64,000 nucleotides of DNA from Scyliorhinus canicula (lineage: Eukaryota): the NCBI RefSeq assembly GCF_902713615.1, contig NC_052171.1, positions 20,248,324-20,312,323 on the forward strand, written 5' to 3'. The notes under the pieces are model-generated. The model worked only from the letters and a program-made list of their open reading frames with translations. It did not search any database and was not told the origin of the DNA. A program made the translations under genes and the position numbers. Positions 3,870 to 63,090 of this stretch are shown here, one piece after another. Every line of letters starts with the position of its first letter. Position 1 is the stretch's first letter.

Positions 3870-6800
3870 CCGGTACAGCTGGCACTGAGCTTCCCATCTC
3901 GTATCTGAGCCTTCGCAAAGATTGCCTCTGTACACTCCTGTAACATCGCTGAACCTCCCTGCCGACCCAGCTGATCAGCTACGGAATTCCTCACCCATTC
4001 CTTTATCCCCTCACCACACATTCTGATTGGTGTCCCAGACTCTACCCTCAATACACGTCAGATCATTCAAACCCCCTGCTGTCCGGCTTTTTACCCTCAC
4101 CACGTCTTTGTTCCCCAGTCGATCCATTGTGATCACTGACCTACACTGGATCCCAGAACCCCCCCCCCCCTCCCCCCCCCCCGGATCACTGACCTACACT
4201 GGATCCCAGACACCCCCTGTGATCACTGACCAACACTGGATCCCACACACCCAACGATCACTGACCTACACTGGATCCCGGAAACCCCCCCCCGGATCAC
4301 TGACCTACACTGGATCCCAGACACCCCCTGAGATCACTGACCCACACTGGATCCCACACACCCAACGATCACTGACCTACACTGGATCCCGGAACCCCCC
4401 CCCCCCCGGATCACTGACCTACACTGGATCCCAGAAACCCCCTGCGATCACTGACCCACACTGGATCTCAGACACCCCCTGCGATCACTGACCCACACTG
4501 GATCCCACACACCCAACGATCACTGACCTACACTGGATCCCGGAACCCCCCCCGGATCACTGACCTACACTGGATCCCAGAAACCCCCTGCGATCACTGA
4601 CCCACACTGGATCTCAGACACCCACTGTGATCACTGACCTACACTGGATCGTCCTCATACCCCTGGGATCACTGACCGACACTGGATCCCACACACCCAA
4701 CGATCACTGACCTACACTGGATCCCGGAACCCCCCCCCCCACCCGGATCACTGACCTACACTGGATCCCAGACACCCCCTGTGATCACTGACCTACACTG
4801 GATCCCGGAACCCTCCCCCTCCCCCCGGATCACTGACCTACACTGGATCCCAGACACCCCCTGCGATCACTGACCCACACTGGATCCCACACACCCAACG
4901 ATCACTGACCTACACTGGATCCCGGAACCCCCCCCCCCGGATCACTGACCTACACTGGATCCCAGACACCCCCTGCGATCACTGACCCACACTGGATCTC
5001 GGACACCCACTGTGATCACTGACCTACACTGGATCGTCCTCATACCCCTGGGATCACTGACCTGCGCTGGATCCTGCCCACCCCCTGCGATCACTTACCT
5101 ACACTGGATCACGGACACCCCCTGGGATCACTGACCTACACTGGATCCCTCAACCCCCAACCCCGGGATCACTGACCTACACTGGATCCCGCTCACCCCC
5201 CGCTGTGATCACTGACCGACACTGGACCCCGGACACCCACTGTGATCACTGGCCTACACTGGATCGCCCTCATACCCCTGTGACCACTGACCTACACTGG
5301 ATCCCGCTCATACCCCTGTGATCACTGACCCACACTGGACCCTGGACACCCCCTGTGATCACTGACCCACACTGGACCCTGGACACCCCCTGTGAGCACT
5401 GACCTACAGTAGATCCCGGTCACCCCCCTGTGATCACTAACCTGCACTGGATTCCGGACACCCATTGTGATCACTCACCTCCACCGGATTGCCCTCACCC
5501 CCTGTGGTCACTGACCCACACTGGATCCTGGACACCCCCTGTGAGCACTGACCTACAGTAGATCCCGGTCACCCCCCTGTGATCACTAACCTGCACTGGA
5601 TTCCGGACACCCATTGTGATCACTCACCTACACCGGATTGCCCTCACCCCCTGTGGTCACTGACCCACACTGGATCCTGGACACCCCCTGGGATCACTGA
5701 CCTACACTGGATCCCGCTCACCCCCCGTGATCACTGACCTAAACTGGATCCTGCTCACCCCCTGTGATTACTGACCTACACTGGATCCCGCTCACCCCCC
5801 GTGATCACTGACCTAAACTGGATCCCACTCACGAACTGTGATCACTGACTACACTGGATCCCGCTCACCCCTTGTGATCACTCACCTACACTGGATCCCG
5901 CTCACACCCCGTGATCACTAACCTACACTGGATCCCGGTCACCCCCTGGGATCACTGACCCACACTGGATCCCTTCCCCCCCCCTGTGATCACTGACCTA
6001 CACTGGATCCCGCTCACCCCCTGTGATCACTGACCCACACTGGATCCCGCTCACCCCCTGTGATCACTGACCCACACTGGATCACGCTCACCCCCTGTGA
6101 TCACTGACCTACACTGGATCCCGCTCACCCCCTGTGATCACTGACCTACACTGGATCCCGCTCACCCCCTGTGATCACTGACCCACACTGGATCCCTCCT
6201 GGGATCACTGACCTACACTGAATTCCCCCGGGGATCACTGACCTACACTGGATCCCACTCACCCCCAGGGAACACTAACTTACACTGGATCCCAGACACC
6301 CCCCCTGTGATCACTGACCTACGGATCCCGCTCACCCCTATGATCACTGACCTACACTGGATCCCTCCTGTGATCACTGACCTACACTGGATCCCTCCCC
6401 CTGGGGATCACTGACCTACACTGGATCCCTCCCCCTGGGGATCACTGACCTACACTGGACCCCCCCCCCCCCCGGGATCACTGACGTACACTGGATCTCC
6501 CCCCTTCTCCCCCCGGCATCACTGACCTACACTGGATCCCTCCCCCTGGGGATCACTGACGTACACTGGATCCCCCCCCCCCCCCCCCGGATCACTGACC
6601 TACACTGGATCCCCCCACCCCGGATCACTGACCTACACTGGACACCCCCCCCCCCCCCCCCCCGGGATCACTGACCTACACTGGACCCCCCCCCCCCCCC
6701 CCCCCCCCCCCCCGGATCACTGGCCTACACTGGACCCCCCCCCCCCCGGATCACTGGCCTACACTGGATCTCCCCCCCCCCTCCCCGGGATTACTTACCT

Positions 6801-7130
6801 GCACTGGATCCCGGACACCCCCTGTGATCACTGACCTACACTGGCTGCTGGTCAAGTAACATCCAGGTTTCACAATGACCTTGTTTTCAAATCCCTCCGC
6901 GGCCCTTTGCCCTCCCCTCTGTGACCTCCTCCTGCCCCCACAACCCTTGGAGATAACTGAGCTCCCTCAATGGTGGCCTGTTCCTCATTCCCAATGATGA
7001 TCGCTTCACCAATGATGGCTGTGCCTCGAGTGGCCTCATTCCCAAGTCCCGGAATGTCATCCCTCCAGTTCTCCCAACAACCTGCCTCGTTATCCCCCCC
7101 CCCCCCCCCCCCGGGACCGATCTCTTTGAC
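3870..7130 (+). mobile_element. Decayed L2-type LINE 3' ORF fragment, split by the minisatellite
   Basis: Flanks read as degenerate ...IQxxAxRxxT...(V)ITDLHW...LVFKSLRGL, the L2 'PITPVLxxLHWLP...FKSLHGLAP' region. Confidence 0.6.
4126..6845. repeat. ~2.7-kb minisatellite, ~32-38 bp unit GATCACTGACCTACACTGGATCCC-N-(C)n-TGT
   Basis: Roughly 75-80 tandem units with a conserved core and variable C-rich linker; higher-order blocks at 4126-5000 and 5340-5690. Confidence 0.97.
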
Positions 7131-7467: not shown

Positions 7468-8115
7468 GTAAGGGAGCAATGGGCTGGGAGATTGGGGGGG
7501 GGGGGCAAGAATTGGGTCTGACGGTTAATTTGGGAGTTTGGAGACATTGGGTGACCCGGAGTCACTATCAAAACATGGGGCCAGGCGAGACGTTTGGCAA
7601 TCTCGGCCACCACGTCCCTGTGGTCAGTGTTAAAGGGTTCTCCGAGGGAGTGAGTGCAGTGGAACATCATTGCGTTCAGGGAAATGGGTTCTTCCCCGAG
7701 AAACAGCCCCAAGACGTTCTCCTTTGTTACGCTGTTCTGGTGGATCAAGTGGAGAGATACACAATGCAAATGCAGCGGATGACATTTATATGGACTTGCG
7801 TCCATGCTCCCATCCCCCCCACACAGGCTACCATTGGTGCTGTACCTACAGCTCTCTCAGACCCATGTTCTGGAGGAACCTCTCCTCTGGCCCCCCCCCC
7901 CCCCCCCCCCCCCCCCCGGTTGGTGTTTCTGACCCTCTCCCTCCATCAAGGTTTTTAATTTTTGTCGCCTCCCCAGATGTTCTCGTGTTGCACTGCCGTC
8001 CAATTTGATCTGGTGTAGACTTCTGACAATTGCCTTGGGCTCCACATTTCTGCGTTGACAGGTGCTGCGAAGTGCCTGTTGTTGTCGACTTGAGCCGGAT
8101 TTCTGGCAACAAGTT

Positions 8116-9215
8116 TCTTTTTAAATGTATTTTATTACAAACATGTATCAAAGTAGGTTACAGCGAATAAACGCCCCACGAAACATGCTTCCCAACAATC
8201 AACTATACAGTCTGTACAGATCGTTCCCCTTTTTCACCCCCCCCCCCCCCCCCTGCGACGAACAGCCCCTCAAACACGGTCACAAACATCCCCCAACTTT
8301 CCTCATAGAAGAGCCCCTTAACTCTAACTTTATCTTCTCTAACTGCAGGAAGCCGTACAGGCCACCCAACCGTGCTGCTACCCCCGGTGGCAATGCCGAC
8401 CGCCACTCCAGCAAAATTCGCCGCCATGAAATCAGAGAGGCGACGGCCAAGACATCGGCCTTCCTCCTCTCCATGAGCTCCGGCTTCTCTGAAACCCCAA
8501 ATATCGCCACCAAAGGGTCCGGGTCCACTCCCTCCTCCACTATCCTGGCTAAAACCACGAACACTCCCGCCCAGAATCTTCCCAATTTTTCACAACCCCA
8601 AAACATGTGCACATGATTCGCTGGCCCCCGCCCACACCTCTCACACTCATCTGCTACCCCCTGAAAGAACCCACTCATTCTCGCCCGAGCCATATGCACC
8701 CTGTGCACCATCTTAAACTGTATCAGGCTCAACCTTGCACAGGAGGAGACCCCGTTTACCCTTCGCAATGCCTCACTCCACACTCCCCAATTGATCTCCA
8801 TTCCCAACTCCCCTTCCCATTTCTCCTTGATCTTCACCACCCGCTCGCCTCCCTGCTCTCCCAGCCACTTGTATATATCCCCAATTCTTCCCTCCCTTTC
8901 CACATCCGGAAGCAGCAGTCGCTACAGCAGGGTGTATCTAGGGAACTCGTTCCAGACCTTTCGTGCAAAGTCCCGAACATGTAGATACCTGAACTCTCTA
9001 TCGCTCGGCAGCTCTACCCTCTCCCTGAGCTCCTCCAGACTGGTGAACCCTTCCTCCAAATACAAAATCCTCACCTTGACCAGCCCCACTTCCCTCTGCC
9101 TCCTGTATACACTATCCATCCCCCCCCCCCCCCCCCCCCCCCCCCCAAGCTCAAACCCATGATTCTCGCACAGCGGCGTTAGCACCGACATCCCTTCCAC
9201 CCTAAAATGCCTCCT
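8116..9215 (-). mobile_element. 5'-truncated L1/Tx1-like LINE (ORF2 C-terminus with CCHC finger)
   Basis: ORF 8280-8903 contains CERCGRGPANHVHMFWGC and IQFKMVHR; T-rich tail near 8116; imperfect flanking duplication ..ttctg.c.acaagtt. Confidence 0.88.
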
Positions 9216-9391
9216 CAGCTGATTCTTCTGCCGACAAGTTGACGCAGTGGCGGAACGAGGACCAGGGAGTTGGCAGGTGGTCCACCGAGCCTCTGCTTCG
9301 CTGAACAATTAGACGCGCGTTTTCTTGCCTTCACTGTCACTTGTTGCCATTCCCTCAGAGCCGGAGTTAAGCCTCTTGTCTGCCCCTCTAG

Positions 9392-9473
9392 GGAATCGGA
9401 GGACACCGCACTGTTAATCCTGAAGGAAATCTACCAGACGCTGGGAGTCAGCCTCGAACAAACGCACCACTGA
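9392..9473 (+). CDS. DDHD2: DDHD2 last coding exon (ESEDTALLILKEIYQTLGVSLEQTHH*)
   Basis: ctctag acceptor completes TGG (Trp); matches DDHD2 C-terminus ESEDTVLLVLKEIYQTQG; TGA at 9471-9473. Confidence 0.93.
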
Positions 9474-10216
9474 TGTGGACGTTGAATCTTATAACAATAG
9501 CACTAACACTGATGGGCCAAGGGAGGAGCTATGATCGCCCCCCCCCTGTTGTTTTTCACATTCAGTCACTGGTTTGCGGAGAAGTTTTTGCCTCATCATC
9601 CCTCGTTGGGGAAGCACTGAAATGAGGTGGACTCGCTGTGCCCTCCAGCGGAGAGTCGAGGTTGGTTTGACGTCCTGTGGAGGCTGGGTTTTCTTCCTGA
9701 GCAGCATGAGGCACTGAAGAGAGGCTTCCCTGGGGCTGTGGGAGGTGGGACCAGTTGTCCAGAGCTTCCACCTTGTGGGCAAACCGCTGGAAGGAATACA
9801 TGAATGTTTCCCGACATGAAAAGAATCGTCAATGGAGGCCCCTCTGGGTATTCGGTGAGGCGTGCAGCCTCCAGCAGCTGACAGTATGAATCGTCGGTGA
9901 CAAAATTTGGATACAGTTCGGGAACTGTGGCTCCGATTGGACCAGCCTGCGTGGACTTTATTAATGTTTATTTATTTATTTTTCTCCACTTGCATTGAAA
10001 TTGCACTCGTGACATGAGCGGGTTTGACCAGAAATGTTTCATATCTTTCTACTTGGTGAATCAGTCAGTGGTTTATCCCCCAGCCTCCTGGGACCTGACT
10101 GATGGTAACAGTGCTCTCCACGTGGCTTCCTAATCTGGACGCTCGCTCCAAACACACACCCTGCACACTCACTCAGTCTGTCTGAGCTGATTGTCAGTGA
10201 ACTAAATTGTACCAGC

Positions 10217-10222
10217 AATAAA
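10217..10222 (+). terminator. Probable DDHD2 polyadenylation signal
   Basis: AATAAA ~750 nt after the stop, followed by GT-rich sequence; AU-rich ATTTA cluster upstream at ~9957-9985. Confidence 0.6.
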
Positions 10223-10377
10223 CACCAGACTGTTTCTCAAGCCGGTGGCTGTGTGTTGCAGTTTTACTGAGTGTCTTTTCTCAAAGGCGGGGAGGTTGGC
10301 CGTGGTGAGCTTTGGATACTTTGCTGGGTGGTCTCCGCGACGTGAATGGACCCCTTTCCCCGTGTGGGGAACAGAAA

Positions 10378-10562
10378 GGGGCTGGTTTAGCTCACTCAGC
10401 TAAATCGCTGGCTTTTAAAGCAGACCAAGCAGGCCAGCAGCACGGTTCGATTCCCGTACCAGCCTCCCCGGACAGGCGCCGGAATGCGGCAACTAGGGGC
10501 TTTTCACAGTAACTTCATTGAAGCCTACTCGTGACAATAAGCGATTTTCATTTTTTCATTTC
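10378..10562 (+). mobile_element. Short tRNA-derived SINE, second family (also 34813-34995, 44694-44870; tail-only pieces ~35980, ~63616)
   Basis: Shared gggctggtttagc...ggttcgattcccgtaccagcc...gcttttcacagtaacttcattgaagcctact.gtgacaataagcgatttt. Confidence 0.85.
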
Positions 10563-10614
10563 AGAAAGCTAGTTGCTTTATGAGGTGTCGGTCATTGCTG
10601 CTGGAGCAGCTCTG

Positions 10615-11165
10615 GAACTTCACAGCTCCAGGGACCCAGGGTTCGATTCCGACCTCGGGCGACTGTGCAGAGTCTGCACTGCTCCCCATGTCGGCTTGGG
10701 TTTCCTCCAACAGTCCAAAGATGTGTCGGTTAGGTGGTGTTCTGGGGACAGGGTGGAGGTGGGATCTCTTGGGGGAACAGTGCAAGCTCGATGGAACGAA
10801 TGGCCTCTTTCTGCAATGTAGATTTTTACAGTTGAGGAAAAAGTGGGTTGAGCTGGTGCGACCCAGGGTGATGTACTGGGGGCGGTAGAGACTGCACAGT
10901 CAGGTGCCATTTTCAAGAGGTAGGTGTGTGGGGGGGGGGGGGGGGGGGGGATTGAAGTCACAAAGAGTTGAGCAGCTCGGTGGCGCAGTGGTTAGCACTG
11001 CTGCCTCATGGCACCGAGGACCCGGGTTCGATTCCGGCCCCAGGTCACTGTCCGTGTGCACATTCTCCCCATGTCTGAGTGGGTCACACCCCCCCACAAC
11101 CCAAAAAGATGTGCAGGGTTGGCCGTGTTAAATTGCCCCTTGATTAGAAAAAGGAATTGGGTACT
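10615..11165 (+). mobile_element. Two V-SINE copies (~10615-10825 decayed; ~10972-11165)
   Basis: tRNA-like head and V-core motifs. Confidence 0.75.
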
Positions 11166-11214
11166 GTAAATTTTTTTTCTTTTTAATTTGAGCAGCTGCA
11201 TTGGGATGTGGTGA

Positions 11215-13651
11215 GTGAGTGGGAGAATGTGTGTTATTGAGCGAGAACCAGGCCCCATGCCTCCACCAGGTTTGAGCCTGCCTGGGAGGCGGCTGGTGTG
11301 TGTCATACTCGGCTCAAGGGGGGAGTGAAGATGTGAAGTAAGAACTCGACAGGCCTATGGACAGGGCGCTCGGAGTGGCGAAGGAGTTGTGAGGTTGGTT
11401 TTGCAGAGCGTGGTCTTGAAGAACCCGGTTCAAAGCTCTCTTGGGCAACTTGCTGAGCTTTAATTAGACCAGGCAGCTGACTTTCATTTGGCTTACGGTA
11501 AAGGGAATGGAGAAATGAAGTGACTATTGCGGAAAGTCAGCTTGGACGGGTTGTCCTTCGAGAATTGGTAGGTGAGTGTGGGGTGAGTAGGTTTTGGTGG
11601 GGTACAATATTGGCAGCTCTTACGGGAACGCTGATGAAGTAATGAAGGTAGCAGAGATATGCCAGCAGTTCGCAGCCACCAAGCACACGTTGCAGCACCT
11701 CGGCCTTTGTTTCTTAACATCACGAAAATCAAACCCAAGGGATCAGGATTGTGTGGAACGGGTGTAAATGTCAAGTATCACCCAGTGAAGGTTGGAATAA
11801 GCAAGCTCCAGTGGCTTGGAGAGCTGTGCCAGTGTGTGTGTGGGAGAAGTGAGTTCAAATCCCAGGAAGGATTTTAGCCGGGTGCCCTTGTGTTTTCATC
11901 GACAGTCCCGGAGGCGGCAGAGATGTTAAATATAAGATCCAGACGTTAGGAAAGCATGGAAGGCAGCGTGGCTGAAAGGATGCACACTCACCTTCCTGCG
12001 ATTTGGGTGGTATGGAGGAGACAGGTTCAGGACTAGCTTCGGGTAGTCAAGTCAGAGCTGAAGGTGGTGTTAGGGGTAGAGTGAGTCAGAGCTGAAGGTG
12101 GTGTTAGGGGGTAGAGCTGAAGGTAGTGTTAGGGGTAAAGTGGACAGAGGGAGTCAGAGCTGAAGGTGGTGTTAGGGGTGGAGTTAAGCAGGGAACAGAG
12201 TGGCAGGAGAGGAGGAAGGTGTGATAGGACCCTGCCCGCCTGGGAGAGTTGGAAGGAGCACGGAATGCAAGCTTAAGGGCAGGGTCCTAGAGCCGAAGTG
12301 AGGGGGGGTGGTGGTTTTGGAGGAAGGCCAGAAAAGGTGGAGGACGGAGGCAAAAATGGATAGGGGAGGAAAGTAATAATAATAAAGTAGCTGCTTCACA
12401 GTTCCCGGGTCAGGGCACAACGCCTTATAGGGATTTTTGGCGGGGGGGGGTCCATGAGGGCTCCCTCAATTCCAGATTCTGGCCTCTCTCCAGGACCCTG
12501 CCCTTAAGCTTGCGCTCCTTCCAACTCTCCCAGGCGGGCAGGGTCCTGTCACACCTTCCTCCTCTCCTGCCACTCTGTCCCCTGCTTAACTCTACCCCTG
12601 ACACCACCTTCAGCTCTGACTCCCTCTATCCCTAACACCACCTTCAGCTCTGCCACTCTGACCCCTAACACCACCTTCAGCTCTGACTCCCTCTGTCCAC
12701 TCTACCCCTAACACCACCTTCAGCTCTGACTCCCTGTCTACTCTACCCCTAACACCACCTTCAGCTCTGACTCCCTCTGTCCACTCTACCCCTAACACCA
12801 CCTTCAGCTCTGACTTGACTACCCGCAGCTAGTCCTGAACCTGTCTCCTCCATACCACCCAAATCGCAGGAAGGTGAGTGTGCATCCTTTCAGCCACGCT
12901 GCCTTCCATGCTTTCCTAACGTCTGGATCTTATATTTAACATCTCTGCCGCCTCCGGGACTGTCGATGAAAACACAAGGGCACCCGGCTAAAATCCTTCC
13001 TGGGATTTGAACTCACTTCTCCCACACACACACTGGCACAGCTCTCCAAGCCACTGGAGCTTGCTTATTCCAACCTTCACTGGGTGATACTTGACATTTA
13101 CATCTGTTCCACACAATCCTGATCCCTTGGGTTTGATTTTCGTGATGTTAATAAACAAAGGCCGAGGTGCTGCAACGTGTGCTTGGTGGCTGCGAACTGC
13201 TGGCATATCTCTGCTACCTTCATTACTTCATCAGCGTTCCCGTAAGAGCTGCCAATATTGTACCCCACCAAAACCTACTCACCCCACACTCACCTACCAA
13301 TTCTCGAAGGACAATCCGTCCAAGGTGACTTTCCGCAATAGTCACTTCATTTCTCCATTCCCTTTACCGTAAGCCAAATGGAAGTCAGCTGCCTGGTCTA
13401 ATTAAAACTCAGCAAGTTGCCCAAGAGAGCTTTGAACCGGGTTCTCGCAAGACCATGCTCTGCAAAACCAACCTCACAACTCCTTCGCCACTCCGAGCGC
13501 CCTGTCCATAGGCCTGTCGAGTTCTTACTTCACATCTTCACTCCCCCCTTGAGCCGAGTATGACACACACCAGCCGCCTCCCAGGCAGGCTCAAACCTGG
13601 TGGAGGCGTGGGGCCTGGTTCTCGCTCAATAACACACATTCTCTCACTCAC
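11215..13651. repeat. Large inverted repeat: arms ~11215-12292 and ~12488-13651, ~195-bp spacer
   Basis: Arms are reverse complements with scattered substitutions; mirrored ORF pairs 11493-11774/13091-13372 and 11659-11877/12988-13206. Confidence 0.97.
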
Positions 13652-14526
13652 CCACCCAGTCCCCCTGCTTCCGAAAGCTCTCAATGTTAGAGGATTGGCA
13701 GATTAAATGTCCGCATCGCCATTCTGTCAGCTGGTCGCCACTCGCTGTTTGCTGCCCTGAACCCTGTCTCTCAGGTAGCACCAACACTGGAAGACAAACT
13801 TCAAACCTGCTCAGCACTTTGGTTTCCATTCCAGCAACAGCGCTTGCCTTCATCCTCAACATTGCCATGTCACACTCCCCATCACCACATGGAACCGAGC
13901 TGCTACGTTTCCATTTCCTCTCCTGGGTTTAACGATGACTTCACAACAACATTAGTATTATTGGAAAATAAATGTTCTACTTCTGGGAAGACTAAGGCTC
14001 AGATTTCAATGAGGTTCAAGTTCTCTTCATTTGGGGGCAGAGAGGGGAAACGCGATCAGGATTAGCAGAGTTTGAGGCTATTGAAGAATGGGTGGGGAGG
14101 GAGACACTGGAGGCAGTAACGGTCCCCAACACCCACCTCACTCAGCTGTGATGGTACAGAGTGCGGCACTGGCAGAGGTGCCATCTGTGACAAAACCTGA
14201 GGTCTGCTCTCTCTGACTGAAACAACAAAAGAGCAATGTCCTGACCACTCAACAGACACCCCGAGGAACAGAATCCCTGCTCTACATCGCACGGCTCGTT
14301 GAGGGATCTTGCTCTGTGCACAGTGGTCGCCATGTGGCCTCCATCCCTTCAGTGGGCGAGGTGAGTGCATTGCTCTGGGTCACATTCCCAGCTCCTGAGG
14401 AAAGAAGCGGGGGGCGTCACACCACCACCAGCAAACCACGCAGAATGCAAATAAAGGGAGGGAGATTAAGTTAACATCAATTTGCGACAATTCTATGTGC
14501 TGTGCACCTGATATTGTCAAACATAT

Positions 14527-14735
14527 GGGGCAGCGTGGCAGCCGAGGACCCACTCACGGCGCCGAGGACCCAGGTTCGATCCTGATCATGTCCGTGAGGA
14601 GTTCGCACATTCTCCCCGTGTGCTTGGGTTTCACCCCCACAGCCCAAAGAAGTGCAGGGTAGGTGGATTGGCCGTGCTAAATTGCCCCTTAATTGGACAA
14701 AAAATGAATTGGATACTCTAAATTTAGGGAAAAAA
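14527..14735 (+). mobile_element. V-SINE, short A-tailed subfamily
   Basis: V-core followed by ccttaattgg...actctaaattt A-rich tail. Confidence 0.8.
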
Positions 14736-14984
14736 AGTCAAACACTCGCTGACACCATTTCAGCTGTCAGACTGTTAGCAAGCCCCCACCCCGAGCTTTT
14801 CTCAGGGCCGTGTGTCTGCTTTCCATGCCACTTGACATGGGCTGATTCGCTGTTTTCCAATTATCCCGAGGGTTCATCCCCAACCCTGCAGATCACATCT
14901 CCCACGTCTCGCAGTGAAAGGTCAACCTCACGGAAAAAGGAGAGACCCACATTTACAGTGTGCCCGTTGCAACCTCAGAATGCG

Positions 14985-15021
<37 letters not shown>

Positions 15022-15775
15022 AGCGCAATGGCAGATGAAGCTCCCACAAACTGCAGCAACGTGACGGTGCACAGAATTCAGTGAGGCCAAAACACAAACT
15101 CCTGGAAACAAAGACCTGCGGAGAGACACACGCGCACACAGAGCGGGTTCCACCCGGCCCTGCTTGGCAATTGGAGAGAGGTGGCAAAGGGTGCTTTTTA
15201 ATGCTGCTGAGAAAGGGGTGGGGGTGCGGGTCAGAGAGCGGGAGAGATTAAATGGCAAAAGATGTTATTAACACCCAGAGGACAAGGAGATGACAGGATC
15301 AAAGTCTAACGTTTGATTTGAGTGACTCTGGGTCAGGAATAAACCACACCACCACCCTGCCCGCCTCAGAGTTGGCAATGAGATAGTTTACAAGGGCACC
15401 GTGGTGCCTCATACATGTGACAGCAGCACAGAGGGCAGCAGGGATACTCCCCACCCAGCGCTGCACCCCCAGGGTGTCAGCCTGGCTAATATGCCCACGT
15501 CTCTGAGGTGGAACATGATCCCGAGTGAGGACAATGAAGTGGTCAGTGTCACACATCACTCCACCTGGAGCTGTGCACAGACACATCCACTGCCGTGGTC
15601 TTCGGTCACAGTGTTGGTGCTGAGGTAGAGAGAGGCGCTGGGATTGACCTGCGAGAGAGAGAGAGTGTGGCAATCCACCCGGCCCTCCCAACAGCGCGCG
15701 ACGCAAGCGAAGCCTTCGTGGGGGAAAAACACCAGAGAGCACCCCCGAGTGTCTTTTTTAAATATCGGTCTTTGT

Positions 15776-15781
15776 TTTATT
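15776..15781 (-). terminator. Probable distal PLPP5 polyadenylation signal (alternatives at 17496-17501 and 17748-17753)
   Basis: TTTATT on plus = AATAAA on minus, at the end of a repeat-poor stretch; Pumilio-type TGTAAATA (minus) at 15898-15905. Confidence 0.55.
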
Positions 15782-17889
15782 TGAACACAAAGAGAATAGT
15801 TTCCATCAATCAGTACACAGGGTTGACGCGAGATTACTTCATTCAGATATTGCAACGAGACACAGGGACTAAAACTTGTCGAGTTTCCTTCCCTGGATAT
15901 TTACAGTACATTGAGTGAATCGATAACCACGAGAGACAATACTTGGTTCCTGCAACCACCAATTTCTGGGGGAAATGCACATTCTGTAAACACTGTGACT
16001 ATTGGAAAGATGAGAAAGAAGCAGCAGGTTTGGTAATCAGGAGGGTTGTTTATAGATATATATATTTCAGATACCTCCTGTGTGGAAGGTTGCTGCACCT
16101 TGGCCTGTGCCAACAAGGTTACTTTTCCTGCCAGGGGAAATCATTTCTCTTTGCCCCACCGCCGGCAAAGGAGAGAAATCGGGCGGAGACTTTCATTAGG
16201 AGGTCCAACCAGCAGAGAGCTCCGGGGTGACGGCCATGCAGCCCGCCAAGCACAAGACCAGTGTTGGGGAGAGGGATAGTGCCACCCTATTGTGACGGTG
16301 GGAATGTGTCCACCAAGGCTGTGTCCTTGGAGCAGCTGCGGAGCAAGGTGGGGGCAGGCGTGCAGCCTGTCCACTACTGCCCCCTCAAACCAATTTTCAA
16401 TCTGGAGCCTGTCTCGACACCAGCCTATGTCTGGACAGACGGTGCATTGCACTTGCCAGCCCTGTCTCCCCCCCCACACACAGCCAGGTCAAGACAGTTT
16501 CTGCAGGAAATGGAATGCTAACAGCTCAACTATGGTCACCGAGAAACAACCTCCCACTCCCCAAACACACACACACACATATGGGTGGGCAAGAGATGGT
16601 TCACGGAAACACGTAAAATTCAGTTCAAAATACACGAGGCAGTCACTCTGTCACACAACGACAACACAAACAAGCGGACAGACCCGAGAACAAACCCCGG
16701 GGGGGGGGGGGGGGGGGGTAGGGTTTGGCACTTCATTACTGGTCCATATGGAATGATGATTGGAACAGTCGAGGGTCTGTCTGCACCCAACACCTCAAAA
16801 TGCTCACAGCTCACGGCAATGGACACGTCCCCAGCAGAAAACAGACACCACTCACAGGGCCGAGAGCCATTCTTCGAATAGAATTCACACCCAATGGAGA
16901 ATTGGAACTAAACTTTGCGTTGGTTTTTTTAAAAAAAGATGTGCGAGGGTGAAGCAGTCCGATTTGGGTTAAAAACTTAATGCTTCAATGCCGTCCTTCC
17001 CCCCCCCCTCCTGGGCCTGTGTGTCACTTTGATTCTCAACCGTCCGGTCAAGCAACCGAGAAAAGCAATCAGCTGTCCTTCCCTGTTCAAGGTGATCATC
17101 TTAAACGAAAAGGATTTTCTTTCTTCAAACTTAAGTGTTCTGACACCGCACGGGGTAAGGGTGGAAACCTCACAGACAGCACCAGCTTCGTCCTTGTACC
17201 TTTGCCTGATGTGGTGCTTTCCAGAACCGTTTGAAAAGGGAGAGAGGATTGTCAGCTCACCTTGTCCAGGCCAGGGTGGGTTCAATTGCCCCCTCGTCAG
17301 AAGCCACGGTCGGAATGGGGCAATGAGGCACAGCCCGGGATTCTGGGTGCATCAACGTCAGAGACACTGAACTGACCTGGGAGTGATGTAAATAAGATTC
17401 TGTTAACGGAGCCTACTTTTAAGATGGTGGGCAATCGTACATCGCGCCTCCCCTCCCCTCTGCCTAGCCCCGTCACAATTCCAGCGATCGCCAGCTTTAT
17501 TTACGACAAGGTGCTCGCGTCAAGGGGCCTGATCGACCTCTCGTCCTGCGGAATAAACCTCAGCCATTTGGTCTAGGTGAAGAGGTCAGTTGTTCCCAGG
17601 CTGAAGTTCATTAATCCCGCAGGACAAGTGCTTCAGCGGGTAAATTATACTCAAACTGTCGTGACCTCGGTCAGGGGGGAGGGGGCCATCTCAAAGTCGC
17701 AACGTCTTACAACCATGGCGAAATATTGCCTTCATACTATCGGTTTTTTTATTTGCAAATTTTTAGATTCGAGCAAAAACGACAAAAAAAAATTGTTTAA
17801 AAATAAGTAAAATCAACTGCTTTAACTTTCATGAACCAATAAAATCTGAAATTCTCTGCTGCTTTGCTGGTCCATTTAATTCCCTTGCT

Positions 17890-17976
17890 TTGCACATGTT
17901 TTGTGTGAGTGTGTGTGTGTCAAGCGTGTGCATCTGTGTGTCTGCGAATGTGTGTCTGCGCCTGTGCATGTGCGTG

Positions 17977-18010
<34 letters not shown>

Positions 18011-18730
18011 AGAGAGAGTGGTGTGTGTGTATGTGCGTTCACGTGTGTGGGTGCCTGCATGTATGTGCCTTGTGTATGCGTGTGGAAGAGAGACAATGGG
18101 GTGTGTGTGTGTGCATGTGTGAGGGGGGGGGGGGGGTGTGCGTGTGTGAGAGGGTGGGTGTGTGCATGTGTGAGAGGGGGGGGTGTGTGCGTGTGTGAGA
18201 GGGGGGGTGTGTGCATGTGTGAGGGGGGGGTGTGCGTGTGTGAGAGGGTGGGTGTGCGCGTGTGTGAGAGGGTGGGTGTGTGCATGTGTGAGAGGGGAGG
18301 TGTGTGCGTGTGTGAGAGGGGGGGTGTGTGCATGTGAGAGAGGGGGAGTGTGTGCATGTGAGAGAGGGTGGGTGTGCGCATGTGAGAGAGGGGGGGTGTG
18401 TGCGTGTGTGAGAGGGTGGGTGTGTGCATGTGTGAGAGGGGGGTGTGTGCGTGTGTGAGAGGGGGGGTGTGTGCATGTGAGAGGGTGAGTGTGTGCGTGT
18501 GAGAGGGGGGGGTGTGTGCATGTGAGAGAGGGGGAGTGTGCGTGTGTGAGAGGGTGGGTGTGTGCATGTGAGAGGGGGGGTGTGTGCATGTGAGAGGGGG
18601 GGTGTGTGCGTGTGTGAGAGGGGGGGTGTGTGCATGTGTGAGAGGGGGGGTGTGTGCATGTGAGAGGGTGGGTGTGCATGTGAGAGAGGGGGGTGTGTGC
18701 GTGTGTGAGAGGGGGGGGTGTGCGTGTATA
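17890..18730. repeat. GT-rich compound micro/minisatellite (GTGTGCATGTGTGAGAGGGGGG-like units)
   Basis: Tandem ~20-bp GT/G-run units; lies ~130 nt downstream of the PLPP5 stop. Confidence 0.95.
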
Positions 18731-18858
18731 AATGTCCACTGATTACAAAGTTGAAGGTGGTCCCATTATAAATATGTGCATATAATGCCCAAAAAAAGGG
18801 GAAGGGAAAGCAAGTGAACATGGTGAGAGGGAGGTTGCAGACTCCTGGTGCAGGCTCT

Positions 18859-19025
18859 CTACACGTCCAGTTTGAAGCTGGGGTTTGACAGCTTCCGTTC
18901 CTGCGCCGGCGACAGTCTGGTCTTCAGGTAGGGTTTGTGGCAATCAGGGTCAGACAGACAGGGGTAGTGCTGTCGGTAGCAGGTGTATGCCACGGTCAGC
19001 CCAATCACAGAGCCAGCCAGCACAT
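18859..19025 (-). CDS. PLPP5: PLPP5 last coding exon ([33 protein letters not shown]...FKLDV*)
   Basis: ctgcag acceptor; 167 nt, phase 1; resembles PLPP5 DVLVGSMIG...CYRQYYPPL...CHKP. Confidence 0.92.
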
Positions 19026-19445
19026 CTGCAGGGAATAGAAAGAATATCACACTTTAGTCAAGGGCGGAACACCAGTTACCTGCCGCACACCAGTTGGGAA
19101 GCTGCACATTTGCATAGATTCCCGAGTCAACGTGAACATTCCAGTACCGGGGGAGTTTCCCAGACTTCCCGCACACCCAGCACCACGAGTGTCACAGAAA
19201 CGCCCCACCCCACCAACATTCTCATCATGCTGACGGCCTGTTTACACACAGAAATCCAATGTCTTTTCGAGCAATCTCTGTGCATATATCAGGAATGAGA
19301 ACAAGGCACAGTCACACATACAGTCACCAGCTTCACGAACCCCGCACATTAACCGCCGGCCGTGCCATCCTCCCACTGCTCCTTAACAATAACCCTGGAG
19401 GGACAGGGGAGGGGCTTTTGAGATGTGGTGTGGGGAGGGTCGATG

Positions 19446-19695
19446 ACAGGCCTGAGGGGGCGCGGGACTGAGGGGGCGCGGGTCTGAGGGGGCGCGGGTC
19501 TGAGGGGGCGCGGGTCTGAGGGGGCGCGGGTCTGAGGGGGCGCGGGCCTGAGGGGGCGCGGGCCTGAGGGGGCGCGGGTCTGAGGGGGCGCGGGTCTGAG
19601 GGGGTATGGGTCTGAGGGGGTGCGGGTCTGAGGGGGCGCGGGTCTGAGGGGGTGCGGGTCTGAGGGGGCGCGGGTCTGAGGGGGCGCGGGTCTGA
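19446..19695. repeat. 16-bp CpG/G-rich minisatellite (GGGTCTGAGGGGGCGC)n
   Basis: ~15 near-identical tandem copies in the last PLPP5 intron. Confidence 0.95.
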
Positions 19696-20202
19696 GAGAG
19701 AGAGAGAGACAGAGAGGGGTAGCGGGGTGAAGAGGGTTGGGGATGGGAATTCCTGAAACTGAAGGAGCAGGCTGCTGAGGAACAGGGGTCCGATGGAAGT
19801 GGGAAATGAGGGAGAGGCTCCCAGTGAGTTTCAGAGGGCGAATGGGACCCGGCCGTGAGGAAATCCTACAAAGGAGCAGGTTAACAGTGAGGCTGCGTGG
19901 GATTGGGAGCCATTGCAGGTGAGTGACGGGGGAGCCACACTTGGTGGGAGTTCGTACGACAGCAGCCGCGTGTCGCAGGAGCTGAAGCTGAGGACAGAGG
20001 GGGACAAAACCACAAGGTCGCTCCCAAGGTTAGGAGAGGACATCGCCTCCTGGAGACAGAGAGAAGGGAACAAAATCCAACTGGATTCCAATTCTCCCAT
20101 CGCTGCTCCAATTCTAATCGGGATGCCCAGATGGATCCCGGCATCAGAGGCTGGAAACAGTTCAACGCGAGGCGACGCACGCAAAGTGCCCGTACCCCTC
20201 AC

Positions 20203-29560: not shown

Positions 29561-31160
29561 TAGCTGGCGTTCCCGAACTTGATAAATTATTGTTGGACAG
29601 CGAATATTGCGATGGTGAGGAAGTGGGCTTTGGAGGAGGGGTCGGTCTGGGGAAGGGTGGAGGCAGCATCGTGTCAGGGCACGGTTTTTAAAAAATATTT
29701 TTATTCTCCTCCTGTTTCGCATTTTCATCCAAATTTACACCCACCAACAAACAATCCGCAGTAACAAATACAATGTCAATCCCCTGGCCAACAATCCCCT
29801 CCTCTCAACAACCCTCAACATTTTAAATACAAATGTCAAAGAAAAGGTTTGAGGACTCCGCCATCTACCCCATACATAGTCACCAACAACGTACACAGTC
29901 CAACACCCCCCCCCCACCCACCCCATACATAGTCACCAACAACATACACAGTCCAACACCCCCCCCCACCCACCCCATACATAGTCACCAACAACATAGA
30001 CAGTCCAACACCCCCACCCACCCCATACATAGTCACCAACAACATACACAGTCCAACACCCCCCCATCCACCCCATACATAGTCACCAACAACATACACA
30101 GTCCAACACCCCCCCATCCACCCCATACATAGTCACCAACAACATACACAGTCCAACACCACCCCACCCACCCCATACATAGTCACCAACAACATACACA
30201 GTCCAACACCCCCCCCACCCACCCCATACATAGTCACCAACAACATACACAGTCCAACACCCCCCCCATCCACCCCATACATAGTCACCAACAACATACA
30301 CAGTCCAACACCCCCCCACCCACCACATACATAGTCACCAACAACATACACAGTCCAACACTCCCCCATCCACCCCATGCATAGTCACCAACAACATACA
30401 CAGTCCAACACTCCCCCATCCACCCCATACATAGTCACCAACAACATACATAGACCAACACCCCCCCACCCACCCCAACGCCCCTTCCCCCAATGTTCAA
30501 TGTCATCCAAATCTTGAAAAGTGCATAATAAACAAAGCCCGTGAATTGTAGAACTCTTCCATCCTTCCCCTCAACTCAAACTTCACCTTCTCGAGTGTTA
30601 AAAACTCCAACAGATCCCCCCACCACCCCAGGGCACAGGGTGGAGCGACTGACCTCCACCCCAACAGGACCTGCCTTCAGCCGATCAGCAAAGCGAAGGC
30701 TAAAACATCTGCCTCCGCACTCGCTTCCAATCCCGGTCGATCCGATATCCCGAACATGGCCTCCAGAGGACCCGGCTCAAGGCTCACGTGTACCACCTTC
30801 GAGATTACCCTGAACACCTCCCTCCAATACCTACAGCTTTGGGCTGATGAGTCTGAGGGCACTGCTGCTGGCGCCTTTGCGTTCTTGCCGGCCAGGTACT
30901 CTGTAAGCCCAGTGGTGGTGTGGGCTTTAAGGGTGTGGGGGCTGTGTCGCCAGCACTTTGGGCTGGATGGCATGTCGTTGTGACAATCACAGGTTTGTGC
31001 CGGCTGGGCTGGACGCGAGGTTTCGGGATTGGCGGTGGGCGGGAATTGAGTCCTTGAGACGCAAATTGGCGGAGCTGGCAGAGTTGGAGGAATTGTATAA
31101 CCTGCCCAAGGGGAATGCCTTTAGGTACCAGCAGTTTTGGGATTTCTGGGATGAAGTCTG
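29560..31160. mobile_element. Interleaved L1-like fragments (a minus-strand 3' end inserted within a plus-strand piece)
   Basis: YCWTANIAMVRKW (+), SLEPGPLEAMFGISD (-), CDNHRFVPAGLD (+). Confidence 0.7.
29868..30476. repeat. ~48-bp minisatellite (CCACCCCATACATAGTCACCAACAACATACACAGTCCAACACCCCCC)n
   Basis: ~12 near-identical tandem copies. Confidence 0.97.
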
Positions 31161-60604: not shown

Positions 60605-61397
60605 GAGAATCCCGGCCCCGGGTTACTGTCCATGTGGGTGAGCTTGCACATTCTCCCCGTGTTTGCGTGGGTTTCGCCCCCAACAACCCAAAGATGTGCA
60701 GGGTAGGTGGATTGGCCACCCTAAATTGCCCCTTCATTGGAAAAAAAAGAATTGGTACTCTGAATGTATTCATTGAAAAAAAGAAAGCAGGGCAGCACGG
60801 TGACGCAGTGGGTTAGCATTGCTGCCTCACGGTGCCGAGGTCCCAGGTTCGATCCCGGCTCTGGGTCACTGTCCGTGTGGACTTTGCACATTCTCCCCGT
60901 GTTTGCATGGGTTTCGCCCCCACAACCCAAAGATGTGCCGGGCAGGTGGATTGGCCACGCTAAATTGCCCCTTAATTGGAAAAAATGAATTGGGTACTCT
61001 AAATTTATTTTTAAAAAGCTGTGGAGATATTTGGGAGGAGCTGGTTTCACACGCTCCACCTTCTTGGTTTACCGTTATAACTTCTGCAAGAAGGGGCAGC
61101 ACGGTGGCCTAGTGGTTAGCACAACCGCCTCACGGCGCTGAGCTCCCAGGTTCGATCCCGGCTCTGGGTCACTGTCCGTGTGGACTTTGCACATTCTCCC
61201 CGTGTTTGCATGGGTTTCACCCCCACAACCCAAAGATGTGCACGGTAGATGGATTGGCCACGCTAAATTGCCCCTTAATTGGAAAAAATGAATTGGGTAC
61301 TCTAAATTTATTTTTAAAAAGCTGTGGAGATATTTGGGAGGAGCTGGTTTCACACGAGGCACCTTCTTGGTTTACCGTGATAACTTCTGCAAGAGGG
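60605..61397 (+). mobile_element. Three tandem V-SINEs with a duplicated ~80-bp unique flank
   Basis: SINEs ~60605-60785, 60790-61017, 61093-61320; gctgtggagatatttggg...acttctgcaaga occurs twice. Confidence 0.85.
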
Positions 61398-61879: not shown

Positions 61880-62648
61880 AAAACTCTTCCTCTGCGCCCC
61901 GGTTCCCTGTCCGTGTGGGTTGCACATTCTCCCCGTGTCTGCGTGTCTCCCAAAAGGATGTGCAGGGTTAGATGGATTGGCAACGCTAAATTGCCCCCTA
62001 ATTGGGGAAAAAAGAATTGGGTACTCGAAACTCTTCTGCTGTGATCTGTGGACAAGTGTGGAGGCAAATGCAGATTGTTTTTTTTTTAATTTAGAGTACC
62101 CAATTCAGTTTTTTCCAATTAAGGGGCAATTTAGCGTGGCCAATTCACCTACCCTGCACATCTTTGGGTTGTGGGGGTGAAACCCACGTAAACACGGGGA
62201 GAATGTGCAAACTCCACACAGACAGTGACCCAGAGCCGGGATCGAACCTGGGACCTCGGCGCCGTGAGGCACAGGGCTAACCCACTGCGCCACCGTGCTG
62301 CCCCAAATGCAGATTGTTGATGAACTGGCTTTTGCATTTCAAAGGTCGAGGATCTCAAAAACGAAAGGGTTTTGACGCCATTAAAGGGGCTGGCGATTTT
62401 AAAAAAAATTTAGAATACCCAATTATTATTTTGTTTCCAATTAAGGGGTGATTTAGCATGACTGTTTTAATAAAAATATATGGCCAATCCACCTACCCTG
62501 CACATCTTTGTGTTGTGGGGGTGAAACTCGCGCAGAGACGGGGAGAATGTGCAAACTCCACATGGACAGTGACCCAGAGCCGGGATTCGAACCCTGGCCC
62601 ATTCCTCACCGCATTCCCAGTGCTACCCACTGCGCCACCGTGCTGCCC
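61880..62648. mobile_element. Three V-SINEs in STAR intron 1 (+ ~61880-62030, - ~62080-62304, - ~62405-62648)
   Basis: V-core in both orientations. Confidence 0.8.
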
Positions 62649-63090
62649 TGGCTGCTGCTTTTAATAATAAGAAATCGGAAGAAGGTTTACATTGGCTTCC
62701 TTGCATAAGCTGTTGTTACTTTTCAATTAATTCGGGGATGGGTTGGAATCGATAAACATTCGGAGGGTCTGTGCAGACCAGATGGGCTGAATGGCCTCCG
62801 TCTGCATGGTCGGGATTCTATAATGTGCGCAGTTCACCAATCCCATCCCCCCCTCATTATTTCAGAGGAAGTCCCACCGGGTGACTAAGTTTCTTGGCCT
62901 GCTGTGTATCTGAGAGTGAAGCAGCAGCAGTTTGGGGGAGACCGAGGTTGTCCCCTACGTTCCTGGAACTGTGCCCTCATGAGCGGTGACTGGGGATACC
63001 ACAGTGTTGGCACTTTCAGAGTGGCAGGACTTTTGATTGAAGGTTCTGTGCTGAAAACATGACCATCTTTCTTCTTTTGGTCTTTTTCAG

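What the first reader, a model, noticed from the sequence alone, without database searches (positions are those of the whole stretch)
11215..13651. 2.4-kb near-perfect palindrome between the convergent DDHD2 and PLPP5 3' ends
Seen: ~1.1-kb arms of mostly non-SINE/LINE sequence, only a few percent diverged, with a ~195-bp spacer that contains AATAAA (12381-12386). The outer edges fade with no clear TSD or transposase. It sits ~1 kb past the DDHD2 poly(A) signal and ~2 kb past the PLPP5 one. Inference: read-through from either gene would form a >1-kb dsRNA hairpin (endo-siRNA or ADAR substrate), or the DNA could extrude a cruciform. It could alternatively be a Foldback-type element.
Basis: partly seen in the sequence, partly recalled or inferred. 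Interest (0 to 1): 0.72.

Follow-up and report, generated by a model that had tools for sequence, protein, structure and literature searches.

The report
Silent 2.5-kb palindrome between two genes
A real 2.5-kb mirror-image duplication of non-coding DNA lies between the DDHD2 and PLPP5 genes of the small-spotted catshark; it exists only at this locus, no RNA covers it in the libraries examined, and it is most likely an ordinary local inverted duplication, not a hairpin-RNA gene or a mobile element.

Summary
The palindrome is real. It runs 11188-13684, slightly wider than reported. The arms are about 1.1 and 1.2 kb and 98.3% identical outside a variable 34/43-bp minisatellite (4 versus 6 units). 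They flank a unique spacer of about 190 bp. DNA contigs from two samples of two studies hold it at single-copy word depth, while the flanking SINEs reach 1e5-1e6. These contigs bridge the right arm into its flank and the left arm into the spacer, so an assembly artefact or a multicopy transposon is unlikely.

As RNA it would fold into a stem of about 1,070 pairs (-2355 kcal/mol). However, one RNA contig set and one raw oligo-dT run show zero depth from 11300 to 14499, although both neighbouring 3' UTRs are covered. About 18 further probable RNA runs hold none of its words.

The layout resembles a Foldback element, but there is no target-site duplication and no other copy. The 190-bp spacer argues against a cruciform.

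A SINE with a perfect 10-bp target duplication sits exactly on the left arm's end, and the outer 40 nt of the arms are 17 times more diverged than the interior. The age is therefore open: either a young duplication that broke at the SINE tail, or an older palindrome homogenised by gene conversion. Interest is low to moderate.

The parts
11188..12296 (.). Left arm of the palindrome. It has a unique outer part (11188-12049), a minisatellite (12050-12184) and a unique inner part (12185-12296). It is G-rich on the + strand (GC skew +0.37).
12050..12184 (.). Left minisatellite: 4 units of 25-44 bp with the core GAGCTGAAGGTGGTGTTAGGGG.
12297..12483 (.). Unique asymmetric spacer of about 190 bp, containing AATAAA at 12381-12386. 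An X1 DNA contig (12226-12450) joins it to the left arm's own sequence version.
12484..13684 (.). Right arm, the reverse complement of the left arm. It is longer because its minisatellite has 6 units. DNA contigs from X1 (13448-14234) and X5 (13476-13729) bridge it into the unique right flank.
12589..12815 (.). Right minisatellite: 6 units of 33-43 bp.
10978..11187 (+). tRNA-derived SINE copy abutting the left arm. It is flanked by a perfect 10-bp direct repeat TTGAGCAGCT (10968-10977 and 11188-11197). The second copy of that repeat is the outermost 10 bp of the left arm, and its reverse complement (TTGAG-AGCT, 13676-13684) ends the right arm.
9243..10240 (+). DDHD2 last coding exon (stop at 9471-9473) and 3' UTR, with AATAAA at 10217. 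RNA contig depth is 153 at 9900-10099 and falls to about 10 by 10100-10299.
15755..19053 (-). PLPP5 last coding exon (stop at 18859-18861) and its roughly 3.1-kb 3' UTR, with AATAAA at 15781-15776. An RNA contig starts at 15770 (depth 109).

Best explanation
This is a genuine, single-locus, non-coding inverted duplication (quasi-palindrome) in the intergenic DNA between the convergent DDHD2 and PLPP5 genes of Scyliorhinus canicula. About 1.1 kb of unique sequence, including a short minisatellite, was copied in reverse orientation on the other side of a roughly 190-bp segment that became the spacer. The most likely mechanism is a replication or repair template switch (fold-back priming on a short inverted microhomology at the spacer ends). 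This step is inferred. Since then the arms have gained about 1.7% substitutions, mostly transitions, and their minisatellites have slipped to 4 and 6 units. The element is not transcribed at a detectable level in poly(A)-type RNA libraries and encodes nothing recognisable. It most likely has no function: it is a neutral structural feature that could form a hairpin only if it became single-stranded or transcribed. Its age is unresolved. One possibility is that the left arm was copied recently and the outer breakpoint fell at the T-rich tail of a pre-existing SINE. The other is that the palindrome predates the SINE insertion and its interior is kept alike by arm-to-arm gene conversion while its edges erode.
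For: Structure and identity. Real DNA: two DNA runs from different samples and studies (X1/S1/P1, X5/S2/P2) hold the arms and spacer at word depth about 3-10, like the unique flanks (about 3-7), whereas the neighbouring SINEs reach 1e5-1e6. X1 and X5 contigs bridge the right arm into the right flank. An X1 contig bridges the left-arm version (with its 7-nt indel and the 12289 allele) into the spacer. Together these two junctions require two oppositely oriented arms. The differences between the arms look like germline mutations (15 of 18 transitions, 4 at CpG), not read errors. The X5 contigs carry left-type alleles at 13315, 13325, 13407 and 13652 and right-type alleles at neighbouring sites, so both allele sets exist in a second animal. 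Single locus: there is no other copy in the window and no excess depth. No coding or known RNA: Pfam found nothing in the arm ORFs, and Rfam found nothing even at E <= 1. Silent: X13 and X22 have zero depth over 11300-14499 while the adjacent UTRs are covered, and about 18 other probable RNA runs hold 0.00 of its words. Independent hint: the stop-to-stop DDHD2-PLPP5 spacing is 9,386 bp here and 9,786 bp in the separate S. torazame assembly.
Against: The left flank-to-left arm junction and the spacer-to-right arm junction were not among the contigs listed, and no long read spanning the whole structure was seen. X1 may come from the animal that was assembled. DNA coverage is low (3-10x words), so the 2x depth expected for collapsed arms cannot be verified. 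Copies diverged by more than 5% elsewhere in the genome would not have been laid, so an old transposon family is not excluded. The RNA evidence is limited to poly(A)/oligo-dT libraries of unknown tissues, one of them only guessed to be RNA. Small RNAs, nuclear RNA and germline-specific transcripts were not tested. The template-switch origin is inferred, not shown.
Confidence: 0.62

Rival explanations
1. It is an old palindrome under concerted evolution. The inverted repeat predates the SINE insertion at its left end, and its interior is kept about 98-99% identical by recurrent arm-to-arm gene conversion, while the outermost and innermost tens of bases escape conversion and decay. This is a variant of the best explanation that differs in age and dynamics.
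For: The SINE's 10-bp target duplication consists of the terminal 10 bp of the left arm, and these bases are also present, reverse-complemented, at the end of the right arm. So the arm end existed as continuous DNA when the SINE inserted. The two SINE target copies are 10/10 identical, while the arm ends covering the same bases differ by an indel and the next 30 nt carry 7 more events. The outer 40 nt have 8 events against 12 in 822 nt (p = 9e-7). The inner 40 nt also have 3 events where 0.6 are expected. This SINE copy is 18.7% from a 13-copy window consensus, against 5-14% for the others. Gene conversion between palindrome arms is well documented in mammals (PMC8600007, PMC8981503). The S. 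torazame intergenic length is similar.
Against: The same facts fit a young copy of the left arm whose synthesis stopped at the SINE's T-rich tail and left untidy junctions. The perfect target duplication suggests the SINE is younger than its distance from my crude consensus implies. Once the outer 40 nt are removed there is no significant divergence gradient (p = 0.2). The shared alleles in X5 are also expected from ordinary polymorphism (about 0.6% in the flanks). No orthologous DNA could be obtained.
Confidence: 0.3
2. It is a non-autonomous Foldback-type DNA transposon: long terminal inverted repeats with an internal tandem-repeat domain and a short non-coding middle domain, inserted between the two genes.
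For: The layout (outer unique domain, tandem-repeat domain with a different copy number in the two arms, inner domain, non-coding middle) is the one described for Foldback elements such as Tetris (PMC4079207). Earlier unchecked notes of this scan list Foldback-like palindromes with mirrored minisatellites elsewhere in this genome.
Against: There is no target-site duplication at 11188/13684 or at nearby offsets, judged on the sequence as it was before the SINE inserted. The termini are the least conserved part of the arms, the opposite of functional TIRs. DNA word depth is single-copy in two animals. There is no second copy in 64 kb, no transposase, and no Pfam hit.
Confidence: 0.1
3. It is a hairpin-RNA (endo-siRNA or ADAR substrate) locus, fed by read-through from DDHD2 or PLPP5 or by a promoter of its own.
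For: The transcript would form a near-perfect stem of about 1,070 bp with uninterrupted runs up to 325 bp. It lies 1.0 and 2.1 kb downstream of two convergent poly(A) signals. A low-depth RNA contig reaches 10915 (about 3% of the UTR depth), 270 bp short of the left arm. hpRNA loci are known to arise as inverted duplications (PMC10317233).
Against: Depth is zero over 11300-14499 in X13 and X22 while the UTRs are covered. About 18 probable RNA runs hold 0.00 of its words. The arms match no gene that could be a target. Known hpRNAs derive from their target genes. Rfam finds nothing.
Confidence: 0.05
4. It is an assembly artefact: a chimeric fold-back long read or a mis-join created a second arm that does not exist in the animal.
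For: Long-read libraries can yield palindromic chimeras. No spanning read was inspected. Two of the four junctions were not among the contigs listed.
Against: An asymmetric 190-bp spacer, different minisatellite copy numbers, transition-biased differences between the arms, and correct syntenic flanks on both sides are not what a fold-back read gives. Contigs built from 31-letter words in two samples confirm orientation-specific junctions and both allele sets. An independent S. torazame assembly has a spacer of similar length.
Confidence: 0.05

Closest known systems
Closely spaced long inverted repeats (quasi-palindromes) formed by local inverted duplication, as catalogued in yeast and human genomes (review PMC7999016)
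   Same: It has two highly similar inverted arms around a spacer, it is non-coding and intergenic, and a single strand could form a hairpin. The arm length (about 1 kb) and identity (98%) are within the described range.
   Different: The 190-bp spacer puts it in the class reported as stable, not fragile, in eukaryotes. The origin by template switch is inferred here and not demonstrated.
Sex-chromosome palindromes of mammals maintained by arm-to-arm gene conversion (PMC8600007, PMC8981503, PMC8327919)
   Same: It is an inverted repeat with a unique spacer and more than 98% arm identity. Its edges are much more diverged than its interior, as expected if conversion homogenises the interior.
   Different: The arms are 10-1000 times shorter, there are no genes in the arms, and a sex-chromosome location is not indicated. 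Concerted evolution is not shown here, because no orthologous sequence was available.
Foldback transposons (Drosophila FB, Tetris, Galileo; PMC4079207, PMC3573991)
   Same: It shares the domain layout: long inverted arms with an internal tandem-repeat block of variable copy number and a short non-coding middle.
   Different: It has no target-site duplication, degenerate termini, single-copy depth, and no related copy in 64 kb.
hpRNA / endo-siRNA hairpin loci (Drosophila; PMC10317233, PMC10292708)
   Same: It is an inverted duplication able to give a long perfect RNA hairpin.
   Different: No transcript was detected, and there is no homology to a target gene. Small RNAs were not tested.

Membership tests
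Long inverted repeat / quasi-palindrome (structural class) | Two inverted arms of high identity separated by a short spacer, beyond chance | tested here: met
   The arms are 1.1 and 1.2 kb with 98.3% identity and a spacer of about 190 bp. The fold is -2355 kcal/mol against -847 for shuffles.
Long inverted repeat / quasi-palindrome (structural class) | Present in the organism's DNA, not only in the assembly | tested here: met
   Contigs from two samples bridge the right arm into its flank and the left arm into the spacer, and both arm allele sets are found. No full-length spanning read was seen.
Foldback transposon | Long TIRs with internal tandem subrepeats and a non-coding middle domain | tested here: met
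   Each arm has an outer unique domain, a 34/43-bp array (4 versus 6 units) and an inner domain, around a 190-bp middle. The layout is as in PMC4079207.
Foldback transposon | Target-site duplication flanking the element | tested here: not met
   No direct repeat flanks 11188/13684, taking the left flank as it was before the SINE inserted.
Foldback transposon | Multiple copies (a family) in the genome | tested here: not met
   Word depth is 3-10 in two DNA runs against 1e5-1e6 for SINEs, and there is no second copy in the window. Copies below 95% identity were not testable.
hpRNA / endo-siRNA locus | Transcription through both arms | tested here: not met
   Depth is zero over 11300-14499 in X13 and X22, and probable RNA runs hold 0.00 of the words. 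Only poly(A)-type libraries were examined.
hpRNA / endo-siRNA locus | Dicer-sized small RNAs from the stem | not testable with these tools
   No small-RNA run was offered.
hpRNA / endo-siRNA locus | Arms homologous to a target gene | tested here: inconclusive
   There is no match in the window, no Pfam domain and single-copy depth. The whole genome could not be searched.
Palindrome under arm-to-arm gene conversion | Arms more alike within a species than orthologous arms are between species | not testable with these tools
Only gene spacing was obtained.
Palindrome under arm-to-arm gene conversion | Heterogeneous divergence, with a homogenised interior and diverged edges | tested here: met
   The outer 40 nt have 8 events against 12 in the remaining 822 nt, p = 9e-7. 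This is also compatible with untidy duplication junctions.

The most novel reading that the evidence does not exclude
This is a small (1.1-kb arm), gene-free, autosomal palindrome that is older than the SINE lodged in its left end. Arm-to-arm gene conversion has kept it about 98-99% identical in a shark lineage while its edges erode. The SINE's target duplication would serve as a built-in time marker.
Probability: 0.3. Interest if true: 0.45.

Novelty: new member of a known kind. Interest (0 to 1): 0.25.

Why it matters
As it stands, it matters little. It is one more local inverted duplication in a repeat-rich shark genome, with no sign of expression or function. Its value is as a clean test case. 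The SINE target duplication that overlaps the arm end gives a relative time marker. A single comparison with the S. torazame locus would show whether short, gene-free palindromes in cartilaginous fishes undergo concerted evolution as the large mammalian sex-chromosome palindromes do. For annotators, it shows that the large hairpin predicted here is not a transcribed dsRNA source in the available libraries.

Tried and rejected
(1) Known RNA families. Rfam found nothing over the window at gathering threshold or over 11000-13900 at E <= 1. ARAGORN found only a SINE-like tRNA-Pro at 62571.
(2) Coding capacity. Three arm and spacer ORFs of 72-93 aa have no Pfam hit.
(3) Extension of the palindrome beyond the SINE or into the flanks. 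Sensitive blastn of 8000-11250 against 13600-17000 found only same-orientation SINE similarity and homopolymers. The 18 nt left of the SINE match the right flank at 5 of 18 positions.
(4) Target-site duplication for the whole element. None was found at several offsets.
(5) A termination zone prone to R-loops (RNA-DNA hybrids), proposed because each gene would meet a G-rich arm first. The arm GC skew (0.37) is matched by 15% of 1.1-kb windows here, and there is no G-quadruplex motif in the arms. RNA already falls off before the arms. I rejected this as unsupported.
(6) A divergence gradient along the arm. It is not significant once the outer 40 nt are removed (p = 0.2).
(7) The orthologous locus in other sharks. 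I reached PLPP5 proteins of S. torazame, S. canicula, Mustelus and others through, after a first search landed on the paralogue PLPP4. The look-up of encoding contigs returned gene positions but no DNA because the files were too large.
(8) The scan's own index. A look-up by sequence was blank, which means nothing. Look-ups by words gave only unchecked leads.
(9) SINE age as a clock. The 18.7% distance from a crude 13-copy consensus conflicts with the perfect 10-bp target duplication, so I do not rely on it.

Full report
OBSERVATION. An inverted-repeat search and gapped alignments confirm the palindrome. They move its limits slightly outward: the left arm is 11188-12296, the spacer is about 12297-12483, and the right arm is 12484-13684. 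Outside the tandem arrays the arms differ by 18 substitutions in about 1,080 aligned bases (98.3% identity). Fifteen of these are transitions and four lie at CpG sites. The inner part of each arm is a minisatellite with the core GAGCTGAAGGTGGTGTTAGGGG. It has four units on the left (12050-12184) and six on the right (12589-12815). No other copy of arm or spacer exists in the 64-kb window. As a single strand, the 2,471 nt from 11198 to 13668 fold at -2355 kcal/mol against about -847 for shuffled sequence. The fold has 1,069 inter-arm pairs and uninterrupted runs of up to 325 pairs.

CONTEXT. Exons of a DDHD-domain gene lie on the + strand (Pfam PF02862, E = 5e-15). Its stop is at 9471-9473 and an AATAAA is at 10217. 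Exons of a PAP2 gene lie on the - strand, with the stop at 18859-18861 and an AATAAA at 15781-15776. The PAP2 exons are identical to the Scyliorhinus canicula protein P0390. NCBI calls this protein 'phospholipid phosphatase 4-like' in catsharks and '5-like' in lamniform sharks. It clusters with PLPP5 of other vertebrates. The stop-to-stop distance between the two genes is 9,386 bp in the window and also in the S. canicula assembly record, so the window is small-spotted catshark.

IS IT REAL DNA, AND HOW MANY COPIES? I laid contigs of two DNA runs from different samples and studies (X1, X5), one probable RNA contig set (X13) and one raw oligo-dT RNA run (X22) on 9900-15890.
- The flanking stretches 10300-10700, 10900-11200 and 14500-14900 are SINEs at word depth 1e5-1e6. 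The arms and spacer sit at depth about 3-10, like the unique flanks (about 3-7). So the arm is not a multicopy element at 95% identity or more.
- An X1 contig (13448-14234) and an X5 contig (13476-13729) run from the right arm into the unique right flank.
- An X1 contig (12226-12450) runs from the left arm's own version, with its 7-nt indel and its allele at 12289, into the spacer. These two junctions are orientation-specific and together require two opposed arms.
- An X5 contig laid on 12998-13455 carries left-arm alleles at 13315, 13325 and 13407 and right-arm alleles at 13103, 13105, 13152, 13381 and 13446. The flank-anchored X5 contig carries the left allele at 13652. Both allele sets therefore exist in a second animal.

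The asymmetric spacer, the unequal minisatellites and the transition bias add to this. Together they make an assembly artefact unlikely (about 5%). Caveats: coverage is low, no spanning long read was seen, two of the four junctions were not among the contigs listed, and X1 may be the assembled animal.

IS IT TRANSCRIBED? X13 covers the DDHD2 3' UTR at depth 153 (9900-10099) and the PLPP5 3' UTR at 109 (from 15770). Weak contigs reach 10915 and 15326 at about 3% of those depths. X13 has zero depth from 11300 to 14499. The raw reads of X22 give 3-5x on the UTRs, antisense as expected for such a library, and nothing on the palindrome. A second run search restricted to the palindrome listed about 18 probable RNA runs of the species with 0.00 of its words, and one with 0.03. 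Read-through dsRNA is therefore not seen. The limits are that these are poly(A)-type libraries of unknown tissues, and small RNA and nuclear RNA could not be examined.

WHAT IT IS NOT.
- Rfam gives nothing even at E <= 1, and the arm ORFs have no Pfam domain.
- The Foldback layout is matched: outer domain, tandem-repeat domain of variable copy number, inner domain, non-coding middle, as described for Tetris (PMC4079207). But there is no target-site duplication, the termini are the least conserved part of the arms, and the depth is single-copy. Two defining features were tested and not met, so I do not file it as a Foldback element.
- Cruciform extrusion is improbable with a 190-bp spacer. A 52-bp spacer already abolishes fork stalling at inverted Alus in eukaryotic cells, and a 6-kb inverted repeat with a 280-bp spacer is stable in wild-type yeast (PMC7999016).
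- I also considered a termination zone prone to R-loops (RNA-DNA hybrids), because each gene would meet a G-rich arm first. The skew is not unusual for this window and there is no G-quadruplex motif in the arms.

A TIME MARKER AT THE LEFT END. A tRNA-derived SINE copy (10978-11187) abuts the left arm and is flanked by a perfect 10-bp direct repeat, TTGAGCAGCT (10968-10977 and 11188-11197). The downstream copy of that repeat is the outermost 10 bp of the left arm. Its reverse complement (TTGAG-AGCT, 13676-13684) ends the right arm. So the arm end was continuous with the DNA now left of the SINE when the SINE inserted. Two histories fit.
- (A) The palindrome is older than the SINE. Its interior must then have been homogenised.
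- (B) The SINE came first, and the left arm was later copied in reverse, with synthesis stopping exactly where the SINE's T-rich tail begins.

The outermost 40 nt carry 8 differences against 12 in the other 822 nt (odds ratio 17, p = 9e-7). The innermost 40 nt also carry more than expected. History A predicts this pattern, because edges escape conversion. History B can explain it by untidy template-switch junctions. The two SINE target copies are identical, while the arm ends covering the same bases are not. This mildly favours A. The shared alleles in X5 are expected under either history, given about 0.6% polymorphism in the flanks. This SINE copy's 18.7% distance from a crude window consensus conflicts with its perfect target duplication, so I do not use it as a clock.

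CROSS-SPECIES TEST. This test was attempted but could not be completed. I reached shark PLPP5 proteins through. For S. torazame (two assemblies), S. canicula and Mustelus the look-ups returned only gene positions, because the DNA files were too large. In the chromosome-level S. torazame assembly the stop-to-stop spacing is 9,786 bp against 9,386 bp here. So there is no net 1.3-2.5-kb difference. This is a weak hint that the structure is shared.

VERDICT. The most likely explanation (0.62) is a real, local, non-coding inverted duplication that is silent in the available RNA data and probably has no function. Whether it is young, or old and homogenised, is open (about 0.3 for the latter). The hairpin-RNA, Foldback and artefact readings each get 0.1 or less. 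It is a new member of a known kind, and interest is low to moderate. Comparison with the S. torazame locus is the single most informative next step.

Noticed in passing
window 10968-11197: A tRNA-derived SINE copy (10978-11187) with a perfect 10-bp target-site duplication TTGAGCAGCT. It is lodged exactly at the outer boundary of the left palindrome arm. About 33 related SINE pieces occur in the 64-kb window.
   Followed up: yes
window 9120-9146, 10930-10950, 14985-15021: Long homopolymers: C27 in the DDHD2 3' region, G21 just left of the SINE, and C37 or longer to the right. The reads tool reports that reads seem cut at 10916-10960 and 14976-15033.
   Followed up: no
window 4177-6822: A large tandem array (37-bp unit, about 67 copies, with a higher-order period of 149 bp) that runs into C-rich 75-125-bp repeats. 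It lies inside a DDHD2 intron.
   Followed up: no
window 18107-18727 and 19452-19696: A 24-bp repeat (about 26 copies) lies just downstream of the PLPP5 stop codon, in the 3' UTR. A very regular 16-bp GC-rich repeat (15 copies, 95% matches) lies in the last intron.
   Followed up: no
window 29861-30477 and 2-692: A 50-bp minisatellite (12 copies, 95% matches, higher-order period 252 bp) lies in the PLPP5 region. A 19-bp CT/CA-rich array lies at the window start.
   Followed up: no
window 60790-61394 and 62571-62652: Two SINE-containing units form a 303-bp tandem duplication (93% identical). ARAGORN calls a tRNA-Pro(GGG) at 62571-62652 inside a SINE hit, so it is probably a SINE head and not a tRNA gene.
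   Followed up: partly
proteins P0390, P0388, P0314: NCBI names the catshark orthologue next to DDHD2 'phospholipid phosphatase 4-like', while the >=90%-identical lamniform proteins in the same cluster are named '5-like'. Synteny with DDHD2 and clustering with PLPP5 suggest the catshark name is a mislabel.
   Followed up: partly
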